Shown in pieces: positions 1-7,933 of a DNA stretch of 64,000 nt. This DNA is from Lepidodermella squamata (taxonomy: Eukaryota; Animalia; Gastrotricha), in NCBI GenBank assembly GCA_047495785.1, contig JBLDXI010000009.1, positions 124,001-188,000 of the forward strand, written 5' to 3'. Numbering within the stretch: position 1 is the first letter of the stretch; each line of letters starts with the position of its first letter. The translations under genes and the position numbers were made by a program. The notes beneath the pieces were generated by a model that had not been told where the DNA came from, made no database searches, and saw only the letters and a list, made by a program, of their open reading frames with translations.

Positions 1-3000
1 ACGAGAAGAATATTAATGGCATCCTCGCTGACGAAATGGGCCTCGGAAAAACCATTCAAACCATCTCACTTCTCGCTCACCTTGCTTGCGCGAAGGGTGT
101 ATGGGGTCCTCATATTATTATTGTGCCCGCATCCGTACTTCTCAACTGGGAAATGGAATTCAAACGCTGGCTACCAGCATTCAAGGTAAGATCACGAAAA
201 CGTGCGATTAACTTTTGCAAAAATTTTATTTTTAAAGGTGCTCACTTATTATGGATCGGTGAAAGATCGCAAGGAAAAACGGCGCGGTTGGACTGATCCG
301 AATGCATTCCATGTTTGTATTACAAGTTATCAGCTGGCAGTTATTGACCAAGGTGTGCTTCGCCGGCGAAGGTGGCACTATATGATTTTGGACGAAGCGC
401 AAAACATCAAGAACTTTCGATCTCGCCGCTGGCAGGCGTTGTTGTCAATGCAAAGCATGCACCGGTTGCTATTGACCGGCACGCCGTTGCAGAACAGCCT
501 CATGGAACTGTGGTCGCTGATGCACTTTTTGATGCCACAGCTGTTTCAGTCAAGTGATGATTTCCGTGACTGGTTCGCCAACCCGCTCGCTTCGATGGTC
601 GAGGGCGATCGCGAGTTCTCGGAGAATCTCATCGTTCGTCTTCACAAAGTTCTTCGGCCGTTCTTGTTGCGGCGTCTTAAAAAAGACGTCGAACGGCAGC
701 TGCCCTCTAAAGAGGAGCACATTGTGCCGTGTCGGCTGTCTCGCCGCCAAAGATTCCTTTATGACGACTTCATGTCCCGAGCCAGCACCCGCGCCGTTCT
801 CCAGGGCGGCCAGTTTGTCTCCGTGCTTGGCGTGCTCGTGCAGTTGCGAAAGGTCTGCAACCACCCTGATCTCTTCGAGCCGCGGCCTGTCAACTCGCCG
901 TTCGTCTTGCCGGACCCGATCGTGTACACATCACCAGCCCTTCTAGCCGACATCCCGGTGAAAAACAACCAGGCTCTGGAGTGGCTTATTGGTGAATATG
1001 TACAACAGCCAACTCTTACCGGTTTTGATTTCGATCGTCGTGCTGAGCTTTGCCCGTCTAAGCGGCTGTTTTATGACACTTATGTCAATCCCGCCACTGA
1101 AGTATCGACAAAACACGACGTGATGACAGCTCTCGTGCAGCGTCGCGTTCGTCTCCAGGCTTTCCGAGCGCTGGCCGGAAACTCGGCCGTGCCGACTGAC
1201 GTCGAAACTCACGGTGCTGATTTAGCGAACGGAAAATCAGTTGGACGGCTGGCCGGTTCTTCGATGTTGAAACCGCCTGGTATTGTTTATCCGTTGAAAT
1301 GGGACAAAGATCAGGCCGGAGTTTCAAACGGCAGCAGTTCAGAATCCAGCAATGGTCAGGCTCAGAAGCCATTCGTTGAGATTTGCCAGAGACTGGAAGT
1401 GTCCGATCCAAACGCCATCGCAATACCTCCCACAGATGTCGTACTGCGTGTTTGCGCGGAGGAGAACGAAACAGCTAGTTTTCTCGCAGTGCTGAATGAG
1501 CAGCGCTGCAGGACCCTGGCATCGCGGCCCCTCTTTGGCCCTGATCTTCTTCGATTAGTATCAACGTCTGAGCACGTCCGACGGTCGTGGCGCGACTCGT
1601 GTGACAGCGTTGAAAATCTGAATTTATGCAGTGACGAAACCGCCTTATCGCCAATTCTACAAACTTTCGCTATTGCCCTGTACCCAGTCGTGGGCAAACG
1701 ACCAGTGTTCTACTCTTCGATTCGAAGCTCGAAACGATTTGCTGAGGATTTGACTCTGGTAAAACCGAGCAATGCGCCGTCGATGAATCGAATGGAGCAT
1801 TTGGTTCATGTTCGGAAGTTGCTCAACTTTCCAGAATTACGGCTCATTCAATACGATTGCGGGAAACTGCAAGCTCTTGCAGAGTTGCTGCGAGCTCTTC
1901 GAACTGACGGCCATCGCGTTCTCGTTTTCACGCAAATGTCTCGCATGTTGGACGTTCTCGAGCAGTTTTTGTCATTCCATGGCTTTGCTTACCTGCGTTT
2001 GGACGGTTCGACGAAGCTGGAAAATCGCCAAGTCCTGGTCGAGCGTTTCAATCAGGATAAGCGCATTTTCTGTTTCATCTTATCGACTCGTGCCGGTGGT
2101 CTTGGCATCAATTTGACCGGCGCTGATACTGTCATTTTTTACGATTCGGATTGGAATCCGACTACAGACGCACAGGCGCAGGATCGCTGCCACCGTATCG
2201 GACAGACGCGGGACGTTCATATTTACCGCCTGGTCTCAGAGCGGACTGTCGAGGAGAATGTTATCAAACGAGCGGCGCAAAAGCGTTTGCTGAATGAACT
2301 TGCGATTGAGGGCGGTGATTTCACGACGGCTCGGTTGAAGGAAAATGCGATTCGCGACATTTTCGGCGCTGATCTATTTGAGGGCACTGCGCCTGAAAGC
2401 GAGAACGCCCAGTCGATCGACATCAAAGAGTTGGAAGAGCCAGATTTGGCCGAAACTGCTCCCGCGCAGCAAATTGTTGCGCTCGAAGAAGCGATGTTGC
2501 AGGCTGAAGGCGCAACCGGCTGTGACGAGGCCGACATCGCTGCGGCGAGACAGGCTCGTCGCGAGCAGATGGCTGAAAATGCTGACAACGACTTCTTCCT
2601 GGAGACTGAACTACCTACTGGTCAGGAGGCGCCAGTCACACCCGCACAGAGTCAGCCGTCGACATCGACCGCTGTCACTCCAGCTGCTGAAATGCCGAAA
2701 GACGAAGTCAGCGTGCTTGAACAACAAGTAATGATCGAATTTTTAGCTCACAATAGTATTTTTAATTCATCGAAATTTCAGCTGCGACCTGTCGAGCGAC
2801 TCGCTCTTGACATTGTTGAGCGGTACATCTCAGCGGCTCAGCAAGTCGAACACGTCCCCGCTTCTGCTAACGGGCAGCAGGGCGAGTCTGACGTTGAGTT
2901 GGACGCGACGTTGCGCAGCGATTTCGAGCTCGAGCGGCTCAAGTCGGTGCAAATTGGCTTGGCAAAGAAGGCGGCTGCGGCATCGAGCAGTGACGAAAGC

Positions 3001-3924
3001 AGCGCGAGCGACATGGACGAGGAAGACCAGGAAGCAGTGGACATTACGCTGACGTACGACCGCAGCGCAGGACAGGTGAACTTGATGCGTAGTAGGCTCC
3101 CAGGTAGGGGTTTAGCTTCGTGGCGCAAGCGTCGCAATGGCCCGTGGGGTGTGGACGGGGAGGGTATTCTAGGTAGGAAGGTTGGCACGAAGCGCAACAT
3201 AATTGCGGCTACAAACGACGCCGACGAGCATAAAGCACCGCGCCGTGGGCCGCCCGGCCGCCCGCCCGGGTTGAGCACGAAGATTGTGCATCTCGAGTCT
3301 GGCCCTAAGCGGGGCAGGGGTCGGCCGCCGAACCCGGAGACGTTGAAGCGGCGGCAACACGAAGCTGCGTTGCGAAAGTACAAGCTGTCAGGCAAATACG
3401 GCGAGTACGCGTCTGCGATGAAGAAAATGCGACGCGAACGCTCTTCCAATATCCGCCGCACCAATCTTCCCGCGAACGGTGAGAAGCGTCGACCGGGTCG
3501 GCCGCGCAAAAACCGCCCTGAGAGGGTGCAGTTCAGAGATGAAGTGTCCGAGAAAGAGTCATCGCCCTCGCCGTCGCCATCGCCGTCTGAAAGCTCACAG
3601 CAGCAGGAAGACGCGTCACGCATGTCGTTTTCAGACAACGAACAGGAAGCTGATTATGGTAATGAGTCACTTTCGGTAAGCGAGGCGTCGAATCAGACCC
3701 CTGCGACGAGCTCTAGCCGGGCGAACCCCGGCGGGCCTTTCTCGCTGACCCCGCAGCGCCGTCTGACCGTGACGTTGCCAAGCGACGGCGACGCGGATGG
3801 CGAAGTCATGACTGGTGGCAAACCGATTCGCGGGTTCGTGGCCCACGTCGACGAAGACGATGACGAGAACGGCGCGGCGGGGCTGACGGCGTCGGTGATG
3901 TCGTTTCCGAACCCGTTTGCATGA
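1..3924 (+). CDS. SRCAP: SWR1-type ATPase domino/SRCAP, short SRCAP/DOM-B-like isoform with C-terminal AT-hooks (5' part outside window)
   Basis: Snf2 motifs [40 protein letters not shown], long insertion, [44 protein letters not shown]. Introns 186-237 and 2728-2781 (54 nt, in-frame). Read-through of the donor at 3076 gives a tail with [26 protein letters not shown], stop at 3922-3924 and AATAAA at 4027-4032. Confidence 0.9.
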
Positions 3925-6900
3925 TGATGCTAGTGTGTGACTGTTTGCTAATTTTATCTATATTTGACCGATTTGCAAGGCGGAATTTGTCTTCTCTATC
4001 ACTATCGTTTCTCAACTTGTTGCCGGAATAAAGCGAGCTTTCAGCCCTGGCCATTTGCGACACGAAGCTAAACGCGGTTGTTTGTTCAAACTAGGCTGGG
4101 TAGCCCATTTATTACATTAATATTACTAATGATTTGGCGACCACTCTTGACTAACTCGCGTTTTGTCGTCCGCAGGCGTGGATCGACGAATGGACGGGCG
4201 ACCTCATGCCGGTATGATTCAACGATGTAGCCATTAACCACCCATTAATTACTACTGGTTGTCTTCTGTGTTCAGATCTGGCTGCCACCGACCCCGCCGT
4301 CAGAACTCAATACCGACGGCGCGCCGCTGCATGACGGCTTCTGTGAGGGATGCATGTGCTGTTGCGACGATTTCGACACTTTGACAACATCTCTGAGCAA
4401 CCCGGCAGTGTTCCTCTACCATGCAGTGCCAATGCTCGACTCCGAGCTACCGCCTGTTCATTTACAGAACCCGGCCGCGCCTGTTCTCAATCGAATCCGG
4501 GCTGCGGTTATCGCCGCTAGTCCTCAGGCCAAGCGGCCGGTCAACGACGAAAATGCTCACGTAAGCTTGATTTGAATTATTGATTTATTGAGATGAATAA
4601 GTCATGGTTGATTTTTGCAGCGCGTTCCGGGCGACAGTGTCAGCGCTCTGTTGAGCGACCAAAACTCGCTGACAGCTATGCCTGGTGACGAAAAGAAACG
4701 AAAATCGCAGTCGAGGAAGCGAACAGGTGCATCTTTGGCGGATGACTGCCCATCAGCACCGCGATCGCCGTTTGAGCGCCCAACTGCTGCTTTGCTCCGA
4801 GTTCGCGATGAAATGCAGCGAAGTCGCCGGCAACAGTCGACTTCGGTTTTGTCGTTGCCGCCGGGTTCCGTCCTTGTTGCCGGAAAAGCGCTTCAACCTG
4901 CTGAGAGCATACCGCTGAGCTTTTCGCTATCCAACGCGATCTCGCGGTTCAGCCCTCTCGGTCACGATTGGCTCATTTCGGTTTGTTTTATCGGTATTTT
5001 TTTAAGACGATTTTTCATGTGTCATTTATAGGAGGAATGGGGAATTCTGGTTGCGCTGTCAAGTTTGATGAACGTACCGACATCGCTGACCCCGGTTCAG
5101 CCGGGTCACGTCGTGAACTGGGATGCGATTGCCGACTTCATTTCTTCCTCTGCCCTTGGTCCCTACCGTGCCGCCAAGATGTGCCGACACCATTTCGACA
5201 GTGCTGTGTTACCTCGAGAAGACGCCCGTCAACAGACTCTCGACCCGCTGGGCGCCATTCTCGTCGGCGGTGACTCATCTGGCCGGCCCACCCCTCCGCC
5301 TGGTTCCGGCAAGAAGCGAGCGGACAAGCGGCGGCAGCAGCAAATGTTGAACGAGCAGCAAATGCTACCGGTTGCCATGAATTCGAACGAGCGCACGGCG
5401 TCGATGCACGCGCAGGACGGCGGCGCCTCGGTAACAGGCTTCCACATGGCCAGGCTCTCGTCGGCTCTGGAAGCTATCACCCGGTTCCGACCGCACAGCC
5501 CACATGTGCCGACTGGCCGGGGCAGTGCGGCTGCCGCTCGCCCGTTCGCCGCCCACTGCCCACTGCTGAACGACATCGACTGGGACAATCCTATGATGCC
5601 AGTGAGTGTGGCCGCGCACCGACAAGCCACGCGGCAAACTCGTCGCCTTCAGCAACACATGCACACGATGCAGCAACAGCAGCACCACACGCCGCATCAG
5701 CTGTACGGCCGTGGGTCGCTCGGACCGGATGGTGGCGTTCAAATGTCGCCGGCCACGGATTCTGCGGGCGGACCGGGCGGAACGCCGCAACACGGCCGTG
5801 CTCTCAGTGACCTCGTCAAATCTCGGTCTACGAATGTTACGATAATGGCGTCGCCGGCTCAGGCAGCTCAGGCGCCGGCGAGCCTGGTCGACTCTTTACT
5901 GATCTCAACACCGCCTTACCCGCAGCAAGTTGCGCCGCAACCGCCCCAGCGTCAGTCTTCCCTCGTCAGTGGCGTGCCATCTCAGCAGCAACAGCAGCAA
6001 GCTCAGCAGATGCAACAGCAGCAGAGGAATATTCAAATTCAAAACCACTCTGCGACGATGAACAGGTCGAATTCGCAGTCGGAAGCGAATGCGAATGCCA
6101 CGTCTGTGACTCGGCTGCTCAGCGTTCAACAGTCACCATCAGTTAGCCAACAGCAGCAACAACAGCAACAGCAGCAAGCTCAACAACAACAACAGCAGCA
6201 ACAAAGCCAGCTGCAACTTCAACAGCAGATGCCGGCGCCTCAACAACAGCAAGCCGTGACGTCAAGAAGCGCCATTTTGTCACCCGCCCCGTCGTCGCAA
6301 GCAGCCGTGTCGAACCAGCCGACAATTTTGACGGCTACCACGGGTGCCGGGGTGCGCCAAACCTCGACGCCCACCGCTCGGCTGCAGCTGACGTCAACTG
6401 GCGCTCCGTTGGGCCGCGTCGCCAGTGCTGGCAACATCGCTGGGCAACAAGGCGGAAACGCGACTGGCCAGCCGTCGCATCAAGTCGCCCAACTGCGCCT
6501 GCAAGTAGCGGCATCGGCAGCCCAGGCGGCGCTGAAGAACGCGACCGGCACTGGACAGGGCGGCAACAACGGTGGCGGCGAAGTGGTGTCTGTGGTTGTG
6601 ACCGGCCCGAGTGGACCGGGTAGTGCCATAAGAGGCGGAACGCCCGTTGAAGCTTTACTTCGCCGATCACCTACCGTGCTGTCGGCAAGTACGACAATAC
6701 GAGCGGTTGGGGCTCGGCATATCGCCCAGCTGCTGCCGTCGGGGGCGACTGGGAGCGGCGGGTTCGTCGCTGTTCAGCAACAGCCGCAACAGTCGATGAA
6801 CCAGCAGTCTCAAATAGTGTCGATTTCCAGCGCCGGCCCTGGCGGCAATGGCTCCGGCCAACCTGCTACTATCGTGCTGAGCACGGCCGGCGGGGCGGGC

Positions 6901-7684
6901 GGTCCCCACGCCTACTCGCAATTTCGATCGTCTCCGCAGCCTCGACCCGGCTTGCGATATGCCGATGCGTCGGGAATTTCCTCAGTGCGACTGGCAGGCG
7001 GCGCTGCAGTCGGCGTGGTTTCATCACCCCTGCGGCAGCAAATCGCGGCTATCCGACCGGCGAATCCGGCCGGGGTTCTGACCGTGGCGACTTGTATGCC
7101 TGCGCCATCGACTCCGAGCGCAACTCCGACGACAGCGGTGACGCCATCGACCACGGCCACCTCGGTGGTCGCCTCGGTTTCGGCTTCTGCGGTGCCGAAC
7201 AACCAGCAGCAAGCGTCTCCGCCGGTACACTTAGTGTCAACGCAACAGCTGCCGGCCTCGAGCGCGCAAGCCACGCAACCTACGACGACTACGGTGATGT
7301 CGCAGCCGTCCGTGGTGGGTTCTCCTCATCCTACTACTATGCCTTGATTGTTTTGTTGACTTCATTTGGCTCATATGTGTACTGTATGTGAAATAGAGTT
7401 CGGCGACGTCGACGCTGTCGAACGCGCTGACCGGCGGGCGGCCGGCTCCGACGCTGACGCTCGGCAACACGACGACGCGGCTGCAGCAGCAACTCGACCC
7501 CGCCAGCGTGGTCGTGTCCGACGGCGACGACGACGACGGCACGGGCGGCGGCACCGAGGACGACTCGGCCGACGGCAGCTCGCCCGCGCAGCCACCGACG
7601 CGCGGCCGCCCGCCGACCCGGCGCTTACAACGCGGGGCTGCCCGGGGCGGCGGCACACGCGGCAAGCAGACCCGCCGCCAGTAA
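1..7684 (+). CDS. EP400: Same locus, long p400/DOM-A-like isoform with SANT-like domain and polyQ tail
   Basis: Phase-0 donor 3076 to acceptor 4175 (branch-like TGACTAAC ~4148-4155). Exons 4176-4211, 4276-4560, 4621-4980, 5032-7314, 7397-7684 splice in frame, giving MP|IWLPPTPP, the p400-type SANT region DWLIS|[38 protein letters not shown]...[14 protein letters not shown], and polyQ tracts. Retaining the last intron stops at 7347. Confidence 0.85.
4027..4032 (+). terminator. Intronic polyadenylation signal for the short domino isoform
   Basis: AATAAA about 100 nt after the stop at 3924 and about 140 nt before the acceptor at 4175; T-rich sequence follows. Confidence 0.65.
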
Positions 7685-7933
7685 TAACTGATTTTTTTCA
7701 TCATTGGCGCTGTTTGTTATTCGCAATACTTGGTCGTCCGTAACATCTTTCGTCCTCGTCGTTATGTTTAGTTTCTCTCTCGACTTCTTATATACCATTT
7801 TTGATGCGCGAGCGTGTATCTTCTTATCGGTGATGCTTATAATAATTAAAGGCTCATGATTTTGACGTTTAACCGACTTTTTTTCTCACCCATGGTGTAA
7901 TTTTTGACGTAGAGAAATTTAACAAACAAAAAT

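What the first reader, a model, noticed from the sequence alone, without database searches (positions are those of the whole stretch)
3076..7684. One domino gene encodes both an SRCAP-type (AT-hook) and a p400-type (SANT/polyQ) remodeller via intronic polyadenylation
Seen in the sequence: at the phase-0 donor 3076 the frame either reads on for ~280 codons with three AT-hook-like motifs (~3241, ~3307, ~3484), a stop at 3924 and AATAAA at 4027, or splices to 4176 and continues through [10 protein letters not shown], a p400-type SANT region and polyQ. Established: vertebrates split these functions into SRCAP (AT-hooks; H2A.Z exchange) and EP400 (SANT, polyQ; TIP60 complex), and Drosophila domino makes DOM-A and DOM-B by alternative processing. 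Inference: if this animal is not an insect, the one-gene/two-complexes switch, with intact AT-hooks, may be ancestral and the vertebrate paralogs a subfunctionalised pair. Ordinary annotation would split or miss this.
Basis: partly seen in the sequence, partly recalled or inferred. Interest (0 to 1): 0.75.

Follow-up and report, generated by a model that had tools for sequence, protein, structure and literature searches.

The report
Domino remodeller gene with two tails
This invertebrate has a single Domino/SRCAP/p400-type chromatin remodeller gene that can end either in a short AT-hook tail or, by splicing past it, in a long p400-like SANT/polyQ tail. The same switch point is present in gene models or transcripts from sponges and corals to sea squirts, so the two vertebrate genes SRCAP and EP400 probably descend from two isoforms of one gene.

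Summary
These are the phase-0 donor CAG|GTGAAC at 3076, a 282-codon in-frame read-through with three basic-flanked GRP cores, a stop at 3922-3924, AATAAA at 4027, and an acceptor at 4176 leading to MP|IWLPPTPP, a p400-type SANT region and polyQ.

The read-through is coding-like: 62% GC against 26-39% in the gene's short introns, and 0 stops against 15 in each other forward frame. The 3075/4176 junction rebuilds a peptide that is continuous in Domino and EP400 proteins of other animals. The genome holds one such gene.

Read-through isoforms starting with Val (the GTN of the unspliced donor) at the homologous residue occur in public models or transcripts of molluscs, an annelid, a brachiopod, echinoderms, a tunicate, arthropods, a coral-like cnidarian and a sponge. 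I confirmed the exon layout in DNA for a sea slug and a tunicate, and the downstream half in a sea urchin.

The link to SRCAP rests on AT-hook motifs only.

Verdict: a real new member of the known DOM-A/DOM-B kind. It also shows the switch is ancestral to animals, where papers I found describe it only in arthropods.

The parts
1..185 (+). Exon, start of the Snf2 N-lobe. The gene begins about 2.1 kb upstream of the window; its HSA domain lies at L012:7949-8059.
186..237 (+). Constitutive intron, 52 nt, GTAAGA..AG, GC 0.27
238..2727 (+). Exon with the split Snf2 ATPase: SNF2-rel_dom at residues 4-212 and Helicase_C at 543-655 of the exon, separated by a long insert
2728..2781 (+). Intron, 54 nt, in frame and without a stop. 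It aligns as a gap against homologues.
2782..3075 (+). Last exon common to both forms. It starts with the LRPVERLAL motif and ends ..LTYDRSAGQ.
3076..3081 (+). Phase-0 switch donor CAG|GTGAAC. It departs from the GTAAG/GTATG donors of the neighbouring introns. The same GTGAA is found at the homologous site in a sea slug and a tunicate.
3076..3924 (+). Read-through terminal coding segment (B-type tail): 282 codons plus TGA. It is basic and Ser-rich and starts VN.., like B-type tails elsewhere.
3256..3264 (+). AT-hook-like core 1 (PPGRPPG, weak)
3319..3327 (+). AT-hook core 2 (KRGRGRPPN, canonical)
3496..3504 (+). AT-hook core 3 ([10 protein letters not shown])
3676..3681 (+). Rival phase-0 donor TCG|GTAAGC inside the read-through ORF. 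It is compatible with acceptor 4176, and its use is untested.
4027..4032 (+). AATAAA, 103 nt after the stop; candidate intronic poly(A) signal
4176..4211 (+). 12-codon mini-exon [12 protein letters not shown] (acceptor AG 4174-4175, donor GTATGA). There is a stop at 4152-4154 and no start codon upstream in frame, so it must be spliced to an upstream exon.
4276..4560 (+). Exon starting IWLPPTPP (W.PPTPP motif at 4279-4299)
4621..4980 (+). Exon with the conserved [15 protein letters not shown] piece and the first SANT residues (..DWLIS)
5032..7314 (+). Large exon: second part of the p400-type SANT region (5032-5232), then Q-rich runs (about 5980-6025 and 6150-6235) and a low-complexity tail. Its end is at 7311 or 7314.
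7397..7684 (+). Probable last exon of the long form (GC3 0.92, contains RGRPP), with stop at 7682-7684. The splice is not verified; the alternative end is the stop at 7345-7347.

Best explanation
The window holds the 3' two thirds of the only SWR1/Domino-type remodeller gene of this genome (HSA domain, then a split Snf2 ATPase). After the last common exon, one phase-0 donor (CAG|GTGAAC at 3076) decides the C-terminus.

If the donor is not used, translation runs on for 282 codons through a basic tail with three AT-hook-like cores. The message presumably ends at the AATAAA at 4027. This is the B-type form, the counterpart of DOM-B and, by motif, of SRCAP.

If the donor is spliced to 4176, the AT-hook segment is removed as part of an 1100-nt intron. 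The protein then continues through a 12-codon mini-exon, the W.PPTPP motif, a p400-type SANT region and polyQ. This is the A-type form, the counterpart of DOM-A and EP400.

Shown here: the coding character of both tails, the conserved junction peptide, single-copy status, and the same layout in other phyla. Inferred: that both mRNAs are made here, that splicing competes with cleavage/polyadenylation, and, from the Drosophila work, that the two forms build an H2A.Z-exchange complex and a TIP60/NuA4-type acetyltransferase complex.
For: - Domains: SNF2-rel_dom plus Helicase_C with a long insert and HSA upstream.
- Read-through is exon-like: GC 0.62 against 0.26-0.39 for introns, 0 stops against 15 in each other forward frame, best codon score in frame.
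- Hook density: 0 of 5000 shuffles reach it.
- A-type tail: SANT matches EP400 at 5.5e-10. The exons are colinear with 20+ W.PPTPP/SANT proteins.
- Junction: the window's ..TYDRSAGQ | [12 protein letters not shown] | IWLPPTPP aligns with the continuous sequence in homologues and in human EP400 8qr1_A. The 10 residues before the Met score at about p = 0.002 against the homologue profile, and no in-frame start lies upstream of them.
- Homologous read-through forms starting Q/K|V: arthropods, gastropods, bivalves, octopus, Owenia, Lingula, sea stars, sea urchin, sea cucumber, Clavelina, a coral-like mRNA contig and the Oscarella transcriptome.
- DNA check: Plakobranchus has CAG|GTGAAA, a 717-codon read-through, a 12-codon mini-exon and then the W.PPTPP exon. 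Clavelina has CAG|GTGAAT.
- One gene only.
- AATAAA at 4027 is the only + strand copy in the 8 kb of the gene.
Against: - No protein of this species or a close relative is in the protein collections, so selection on the read-through ORF could not be measured.
- The tail shows no alignable similarity to any other B-type or SRCAP tail. AT-hooks are short motifs that can arise repeatedly in basic disordered tails, and several B-type tails lack them (Lingula, Owenia, Octopus, coral, sponge).
- A single AATAAA in 250 nt is weak evidence; by my estimate about 0.2 would be expected by chance.
- A stronger-looking phase-0 donor at 3676 could join the hooks to the A-type tail.
- The genome is reported by another agent to use spliced-leader trans-splicing, so 4176 could also serve as a trans-splice acceptor.
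Confidence: 0.8

Rival explanations
1. Gene fission or an operon. The upstream gene always ends at 3924 as a pure SWR1/SRCAP-like enzyme. The SANT/polyQ part is a separate gene starting at the Met at 4206 ([10 protein letters not shown]), perhaps SL trans-spliced at 4176.
For: AATAAA lies 145 nt before the acceptor. The mini-exon has an ATG two codons before its end. Annotators made exactly such separate genes in Plakobranchus and Lytechinus pictus. Another agent reports SL RNA genes in this genome (untested here).
Against: The ten codons before that Met encode residues conserved in homologues (about p = 0.002), yet they have a stop and no start upstream in frame. They are therefore translated only when spliced to 3075. 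A SANT protein without the HSA domain would lack the actin/Arp4 platform that Eaf1, DOM-A and EP400 have (Scacchetti 2020, PMC7239659).
Confidence: 0.07
2. There is only one protein. The AT-hook segment is a constitutive or cassette exon joined to the A-type tail through the donor TCG|GTAAGC at 3676, so hooks, SANT and polyQ sit on one polypeptide.
For: The donor at 3676 is phase 0 and closer to consensus than the one at 3076. A few public models (P0266, P0306) carry a read-through start and W.PPTPP/SANT together.
Against: That junction would break the conserved ..NQ + IW.S..MP peptide. Among the 150 representatives, no protein has both strict AT-hooks after the ATPase and W.PPTPP. Segment 3676-3921 is as GC-rich as the exons. 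The mixed models are predictions and may be merged isoforms.
Confidence: 0.08
3. Only the long A-type form is made, and the open frame 3076-3921 is an unexpressed relic or chance ORF inside a long intron.
For: No transcript evidence exists. The tail has no detectable homologue.
Against: The segment has 282 open codons, exon-like GC, an in-frame codon signal and three hooks. All other introns of the gene are 51-85 nt. Homologous read-through isoforms are transcribed in other animals: a coral-like mRNA contig and the Oscarella transcriptome.
Confidence: 0.05

Closest known systems
[quoted passage not shown]
   Same: One gene with a shared HSA domain and split ATPase. The long tail has SANT and polyQ; the short alternative tail is basic and disordered. 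Insect B-type forms (for example Anopheles P0076) diverge at the same residue..NQ|VN...
   Different: This is a non-arthropod lineage on a very long branch. The B-type tail here carries three AT-hook-like cores, which the dipteran tails in the panel lack. Complex composition and function are untested here. D. melanogaster's own sequence was not examined.
Vertebrate SRCAP
   Same: SWR1-type ATPase. The C-terminal tail carries AT-hooks, usually three, and has no W.PPTPP or SANT.
   Different: SRCAP tails have the hooks 450-1300 residues after the ATPase. They lack the ..TY.REDA.NQ junction peptide and show no alignable similarity to this tail. The resemblance is at motif level only.
Vertebrate EP400 (p400), scaffold of TIP60
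   Same: The post-ATPase region is colinear: LTY.RED.., MP.W.PPTPP, the ..LL.(I/V)R.E.. piece, a SANT region, then Q-rich sequence.
   Different: EP400 is a separate gene with a more diverged ATPase; it is not among the 150 best ATPase matches, whereas SRCAP is. Here the tail is one of two outputs of a single gene.
Yeast Swr1 plus Eaf1 (SWR1 and NuA4 complexes)
   Same: The same two functions, H2A.Z exchange and an HSA-SANT platform for a Tip60/Esa1 acetyltransferase, as argued by Auger 2008 and cited in PMC7239659.
   Different: In yeast these are two unrelated genes. Here the SANT platform is fused behind the ATPase and selected by RNA processing.

Membership tests
SWR1/SRCAP/Domino subfamily of Snf2 ATPases | HSA domain N-terminal to the ATPase | tested here: met
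   PF07529 HSA, E = 1.6e-14, at L012:7949-8059, about 1 kb upstream of the window
SWR1/SRCAP/Domino subfamily of Snf2 ATPases | Snf2 ATPase split by a long insertion between the two lobes | tested here: met
   SNF2-rel_dom at residues 4-212 and Helicase_C at 543-655 of exon 238-2727
SWR1/SRCAP/Domino subfamily of Snf2 ATPases | Closest relatives are SRCAP/Domino proteins | tested here: met
   The best 150 of 1.84 billion representatives include named SRCAP and 'helicase domino' proteins at 55-68% identity in the C-lobe
DOM-A / EP400-type tail | W.PPTPP motif followed by a p400-type SANT region and Q-rich sequence | tested here: met
   IWLPPTPP at 4276-4299. SANT matches EP400 at 5.5e-10 and 24 Domino proteins at 1e-9 to 1e-15. 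PolyQ runs lie at about 5980-6235. Pfam gave no SANT hit on single exons, because the domain is split by intron 4981-5031.
DOM-B-type alternative tail | Alternative C-terminus beginning at the conserved phase-0 donor after ..TY.REDA.NQ, by read-through (first residue Val) | tested here: met
   The window reads ..SAGQ|VNLMRS... The same Q/K|V start is seen in many phyla and was checked in DNA for Plakobranchus and Clavelina.
DOM-B-type alternative tail | Both mRNA forms are actually produced (alternative splicing versus intronic polyadenylation) | not testable with these tools
No proteins of this species are in the collections.
SRCAP-type tail | AT-hook DNA-binding motifs in the C-terminal tail | tested here: inconclusive
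   Three basic-flanked GRP cores, one canonical RGRP. There is no Pfam AT_hook hit at E <= 0.1 and no alignable similarity to SRCAP tails.
Two-complex system (SWR1-like and NuA4/TIP60-like) | Each isoform nucleates its own complex with its own activity | not testable with these tools
   Known only from Drosophila biochemistry (PMC7239659)
Single-gene state (no separate SRCAP and EP400 paralogues) | No second SWR1-type ATPase, SANT tail or AT-hook tail in the genome | tested here: met
   Only the window's locus matches at 100%; the next ATPase hits are 36-51% identical, and the lobe pairs I inspected are adjacent. The split C10 hit is a chromodomain CHD. Each tail finds only itself.

The most novel reading that the evidence does not exclude
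The vertebrate SRCAP/EP400 pair is the fixed outcome of an alternative-3'-end switch that already existed in the first animals. One phase-0 donor after ..TY.REDA.NQ is either read through into a basic, often AT-hook-bearing terminal exon, or spliced to an 11-12-codon mini-exon and the W.PPTPP/SANT tail. In the three DNAs I read, that donor is GTGAA, which departs from the consensus. After the vertebrate duplication each copy would have kept one isoform (subfunctionalisation). That would make the fly arrangement ancestral, not convergent as the 2020 eLife digest puts it.
Probability: 0.7. Interest if true: 0.65.

Novelty: new member of a known kind. Interest (0 to 1): 0.55.

Why it matters
Papers that I could search describe the DOM-A/DOM-B division of labour for Drosophila. 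They note alternative C-termini only in other arthropods, and the digest calls the fly solution convergent with the vertebrate gene pair (PMC7239659). This locus, together with the comparison it prompted, indicates the opposite. The switch sits at the same codon, with the same mini-exon, in gene models or transcripts from sponge and coral to tunicate, and sea slug and tunicate DNA also share the same unusual donor. SRCAP and EP400 would then be a clear case of two isoforms turned into two genes.

It also has a practical side. Annotation pipelines often cut the gene in two, or name isoforms of one gene 'SRCAP-like', 'domino-like' and 'p400-like'. That misleads orthology tables and counts of remodellers. 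Finally, the off-consensus donor followed by a poly(A) signal offers a simple, testable control point for the balance between H2A.Z deposition and TIP60-type acetylation.

Tried and rejected
- Word search with the last common exon plus read-through (380 aa) gave no hit.
- The best ATPase hit, P0001, is an artefactual double C-lobe. P0109's apparent coverage of the tail is not real homology.
- The ant isoform X7 (P0173) is a truncated A-type form, not a B-type form.
- phmmer of the read-through tail against all fetched proteins found nothing, so a shared 'SRCAP tail' domain is rejected.
- PDB searches with the tail and the W.PPTPP exon alone gave only noise.
- The rotifer proteins (P0101, P0128) continue similarly after the junction, so their 'V' is probably an ordinary exon. 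I do not count them.
- A tree of the C-lobe left the window unplaced on a very long branch, so I cannot name the phylum. Other agents' guesses of rotifer or gastrotrich are untested.
- The C10/C48 split-lobe hits were checked as possible second SWR1 genes and are CHD.
Full report
**What is in the sequence.** The window starts inside a Snf2 ATPase gene on the + strand. I read the following model from the DNA:
- exon to 185, then a 52-nt intron
- exon 238-2727, with Pfam SNF2-rel_dom and Helicase_C separated by about 330 residues
- an in-frame 54-nt intron, 2728-2781
- exon 2782-3075

Upstream of the window the same gene has an HSA domain. At 3076 there is a GT directly after a complete codon. 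The frame stays open for 282 more codons to TGA at 3922-3924. AATAAA lies at 4027-4032 and is the only + strand copy in the first 8.1 kb.

The open stretch contains three GRP cores flanked by Lys/Arg, at 3256, 3319 and 3496. The second is a canonical RGRP. No shuffle out of 5000 reached this density.

Downstream lies an acceptor (AG 4174-4175) and a 36-nt exon encoding [12 protein letters not shown]. After it come:
- exon 4276-4560, starting IWLPPTPP
- exon 4621-4980
- a large exon from 5032, with a SANT-like start and polyQ
- probably a last exon, 7397-7684

**Is the read-through coding?** Yes, as far as sequence can tell:
- GC is 0.62, like the exons (0.53-0.63). The five short introns have 0.26-0.39 and the stretch after the stop has 0.43.
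- The read-through frame has 0 stops, against 15 in each of the other two forward frames.
- A codon model trained on the ATPase exons scores best in that frame.
- All other introns of the gene are 51-85 nt, so an 1100-nt 'intron' that is three quarters open frame stands out.

**Is 3075 really joined to 4176?** I could not get reads, so I used homology. The exhaustive protein search with the C-lobe plus tail returned 150 SWR1-family representatives. In every protein with W.PPTPP, the sequence runs without a break through ..L(T)Y.REDA.NQ, then (I/V)(W/Y)(I/V)S.....(E)MP(M/I), then W.PPTPP..DNDIYID. Human EP400 in the PDB shows the same run.

The window's exon end (..LTYDRSAGQ), mini-exon and next exon fit this pattern residue for residue; the Ciona savignyi protein is the closest match. 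The ten residues before the Met of the mini-exon score at about p = 0.002 against the homologue profile. They have a stop at 4152-4154 and no start codon upstream in frame. They can therefore only be translated after splicing to an upstream exon.

This favours donor 3076 over the better-looking phase-0 donor at 3676. It also argues against a separate downstream gene.

The later exons are colinear with Domino and EP400. The SANT half matches EP400 at 5.5e-10, and the SANT region is split by intron 4981-5031, which explains why Pfam found no SANT hit on single exons.

**One gene only.** In the 121-Mb assembly the ATPase finds only its own locus at high identity. All other hits are 36-51% identical, and the lobe pairs I inspected are adjacent. 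The one split pair (C10, with a twin on C48) carries chromodomains and is therefore a CHD. Each of the three tail pieces finds only itself.

**The same switch elsewhere.** Proteins in the panel fall into three tail classes:
- W.PPTPP plus SANT
- vertebrate SRCAP, with two or three AT-hooks far downstream and no junction peptide
- a class that shares everything up to ..NQ and then continues with Val and a basic, Ser-rich tail

Val is what an unspliced GTN donor encodes. The window's read-through starts VN.., like many of these.

With names from the cluster look-ups and a second word search, this read-through class includes:
- insects and spiders
- gastropods (Biomphalaria, Bulinus, Elysia, Plakobranchus, Nucella, Batillaria)
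- bivalves (Mytilus, Sinanodonta, Mya) and Octopus
- the annelid Owenia and the brachiopod Lingula
- sea stars, a sea urchin and a sea cucumber
- the tunicate Clavelina
- an mRNA-like Logan contig 74% identical to a coral Domino over 2154 residues
- a complete ORF from the Oscarella sponge transcriptome

The same taxa also have the W.PPTPP form.

I checked DNA in three cases.
- **Plakobranchus:** ..TCT CAG|GTGAAA, a 717-codon read-through, then 5.4 kb on a 12-codon mini-exon (cag|ATG TTC .. ATG CCG|gtaagt), then the W.PPTPP exon.
- **Clavelina:** AAT CAG|GTGAAT, with W.PPTPP and SANT exons after the read-through end of its first copy.
- **Lytechinus pictus:** a 3527-residue 'SRCAP-like' model ends 8.9 kb before an 11-codon mini-exon. 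NCBI starts a separate 'p400-like' gene at the Met of that mini-exon.

The donor reads GTGAA in all three genomes where I could see it: this window, the sea slug and the tunicate. That is off the GTAAG/GTATG pattern of the neighbouring introns in this gene.

**AT-hooks.** Basic-flanked GRP cores occur in the read-through tails of gastropods, Mytilus, sea stars (KRGRGRPRK), L. pictus, Clavelina and some insects. They are absent from those of Lingula, Owenia, Octopus, the coral and the sponge.

The window's tail, with three hooks, is the richest I saw outside vertebrate SRCAP. It aligns with none of the other tails. The link to SRCAP is therefore plausible but only motif-deep, and such motifs can arise repeatedly.

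**Mechanism.**
- Shown: two coding continuations from one donor, and conservation of the splice junction.
- Inferred: competition between U1 recognition of an off-consensus donor and cleavage at the AATAAA 103 nt after the stop, giving a short AT-hook form and a long SANT/polyQ form.
- Inferred from Drosophila (PMC7239659; 10.1101/052746; 10.1101/2024.07.30.605802): the short form would drive ATP-dependent H2A.Z exchange, and the long form would scaffold a TIP60/NuA4-type acetyltransferase complex.

**What is known.** DOM-A = p400-like and DOM-B = SRCAP-like is established for flies. Scacchetti et al. mention alternative C-termini in four insects and a spider and suggest spread 'throughout the Arthropoda'. 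Their digest calls the fly and vertebrate solutions convergent. My searches found no paper extending this beyond arthropods or proposing isoform-to-paralogue subfunctionalisation.

Public gene models already contain both forms in many phyla, under mixed names. This locus is thus a new member of a known kind. The wider pattern is an under-described but easily verified point.

**Limits.**
- There is no transcript evidence for this species.
- The taxon is unresolved: the gene sits on a long branch, and other agents guess rotifer or gastrotrich.
- The sponge and coral cases rest on transcripts or contigs without matching genomic DNA.
- Vertebrate intron positions were not examined.
- The 3' end of the long form (7347 or 7684) is unsettled. 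Phase-0 donors at 7312 and 7315 fit the acceptor at 7396/7397.

Noticed in passing
L014:1-16496 (Clavelina lepadiformis contig): There are two tandem copies of the C-terminal half of the Domino gene with near-identical read-through tails (P0179, P0091). Only the first is followed by W.PPTPP (1605) and SANT (3719) exons. This could be a recent tandem duplicate that keeps only the B-type end, or an assembly artefact.
   Followed up: partly
L015:42459-47092 and L017:10001-23379: Public annotation cuts the A-type tail off as a separate gene that starts at a Met of the mini-exon (the first codon in Plakobranchus, the penultimate in Lytechinus pictus, 'E1A-binding protein p400-like'). Isoforms of one Mytilus trossulus gene are named both 'SRCAP-like' and 'domino-like'.
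   Followed up: partly
P0266, P0306, P0283 (public models): A few models carry both a read-through start (..NQ|V..) and, further on, W.PPTPP/SANT. Either the isoforms were merged by prediction, or a second donor inside the B-type exon is sometimes used, as donor 3676 could be here.
   Followed up: no
window:2728-2781: This 54-nt intron is in frame and free of stops, so retaining it would add 18 residues without breaking the protein.
   Followed up: no
P0070, P0183, P0189, P0065 C-termini: A-type proteins of oysters, mussels, sea urchins and crinoids end with a shared ..(P)Y(A/T)MR(T/L)R.. motif. The window's last exon lacks it and instead has an RGRPP core, a fourth hook-like motif on the long form.
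   Followed up: no
G000:C10:1942234-1944488 and G000:C48:496757-499069: Two CHD-type remodeller loci give identical scores to the query, which suggests a very recent duplicate or an uncollapsed haplotype.
   Followed up: partly
window:7685-7940: The next gene's ATG (about 7934) follows the Domino stop by only about 250 nt, and no AATAAA lies between them. The long form must use a variant poly(A) signal, for example AATTAAA near 7846.
   Followed up: no
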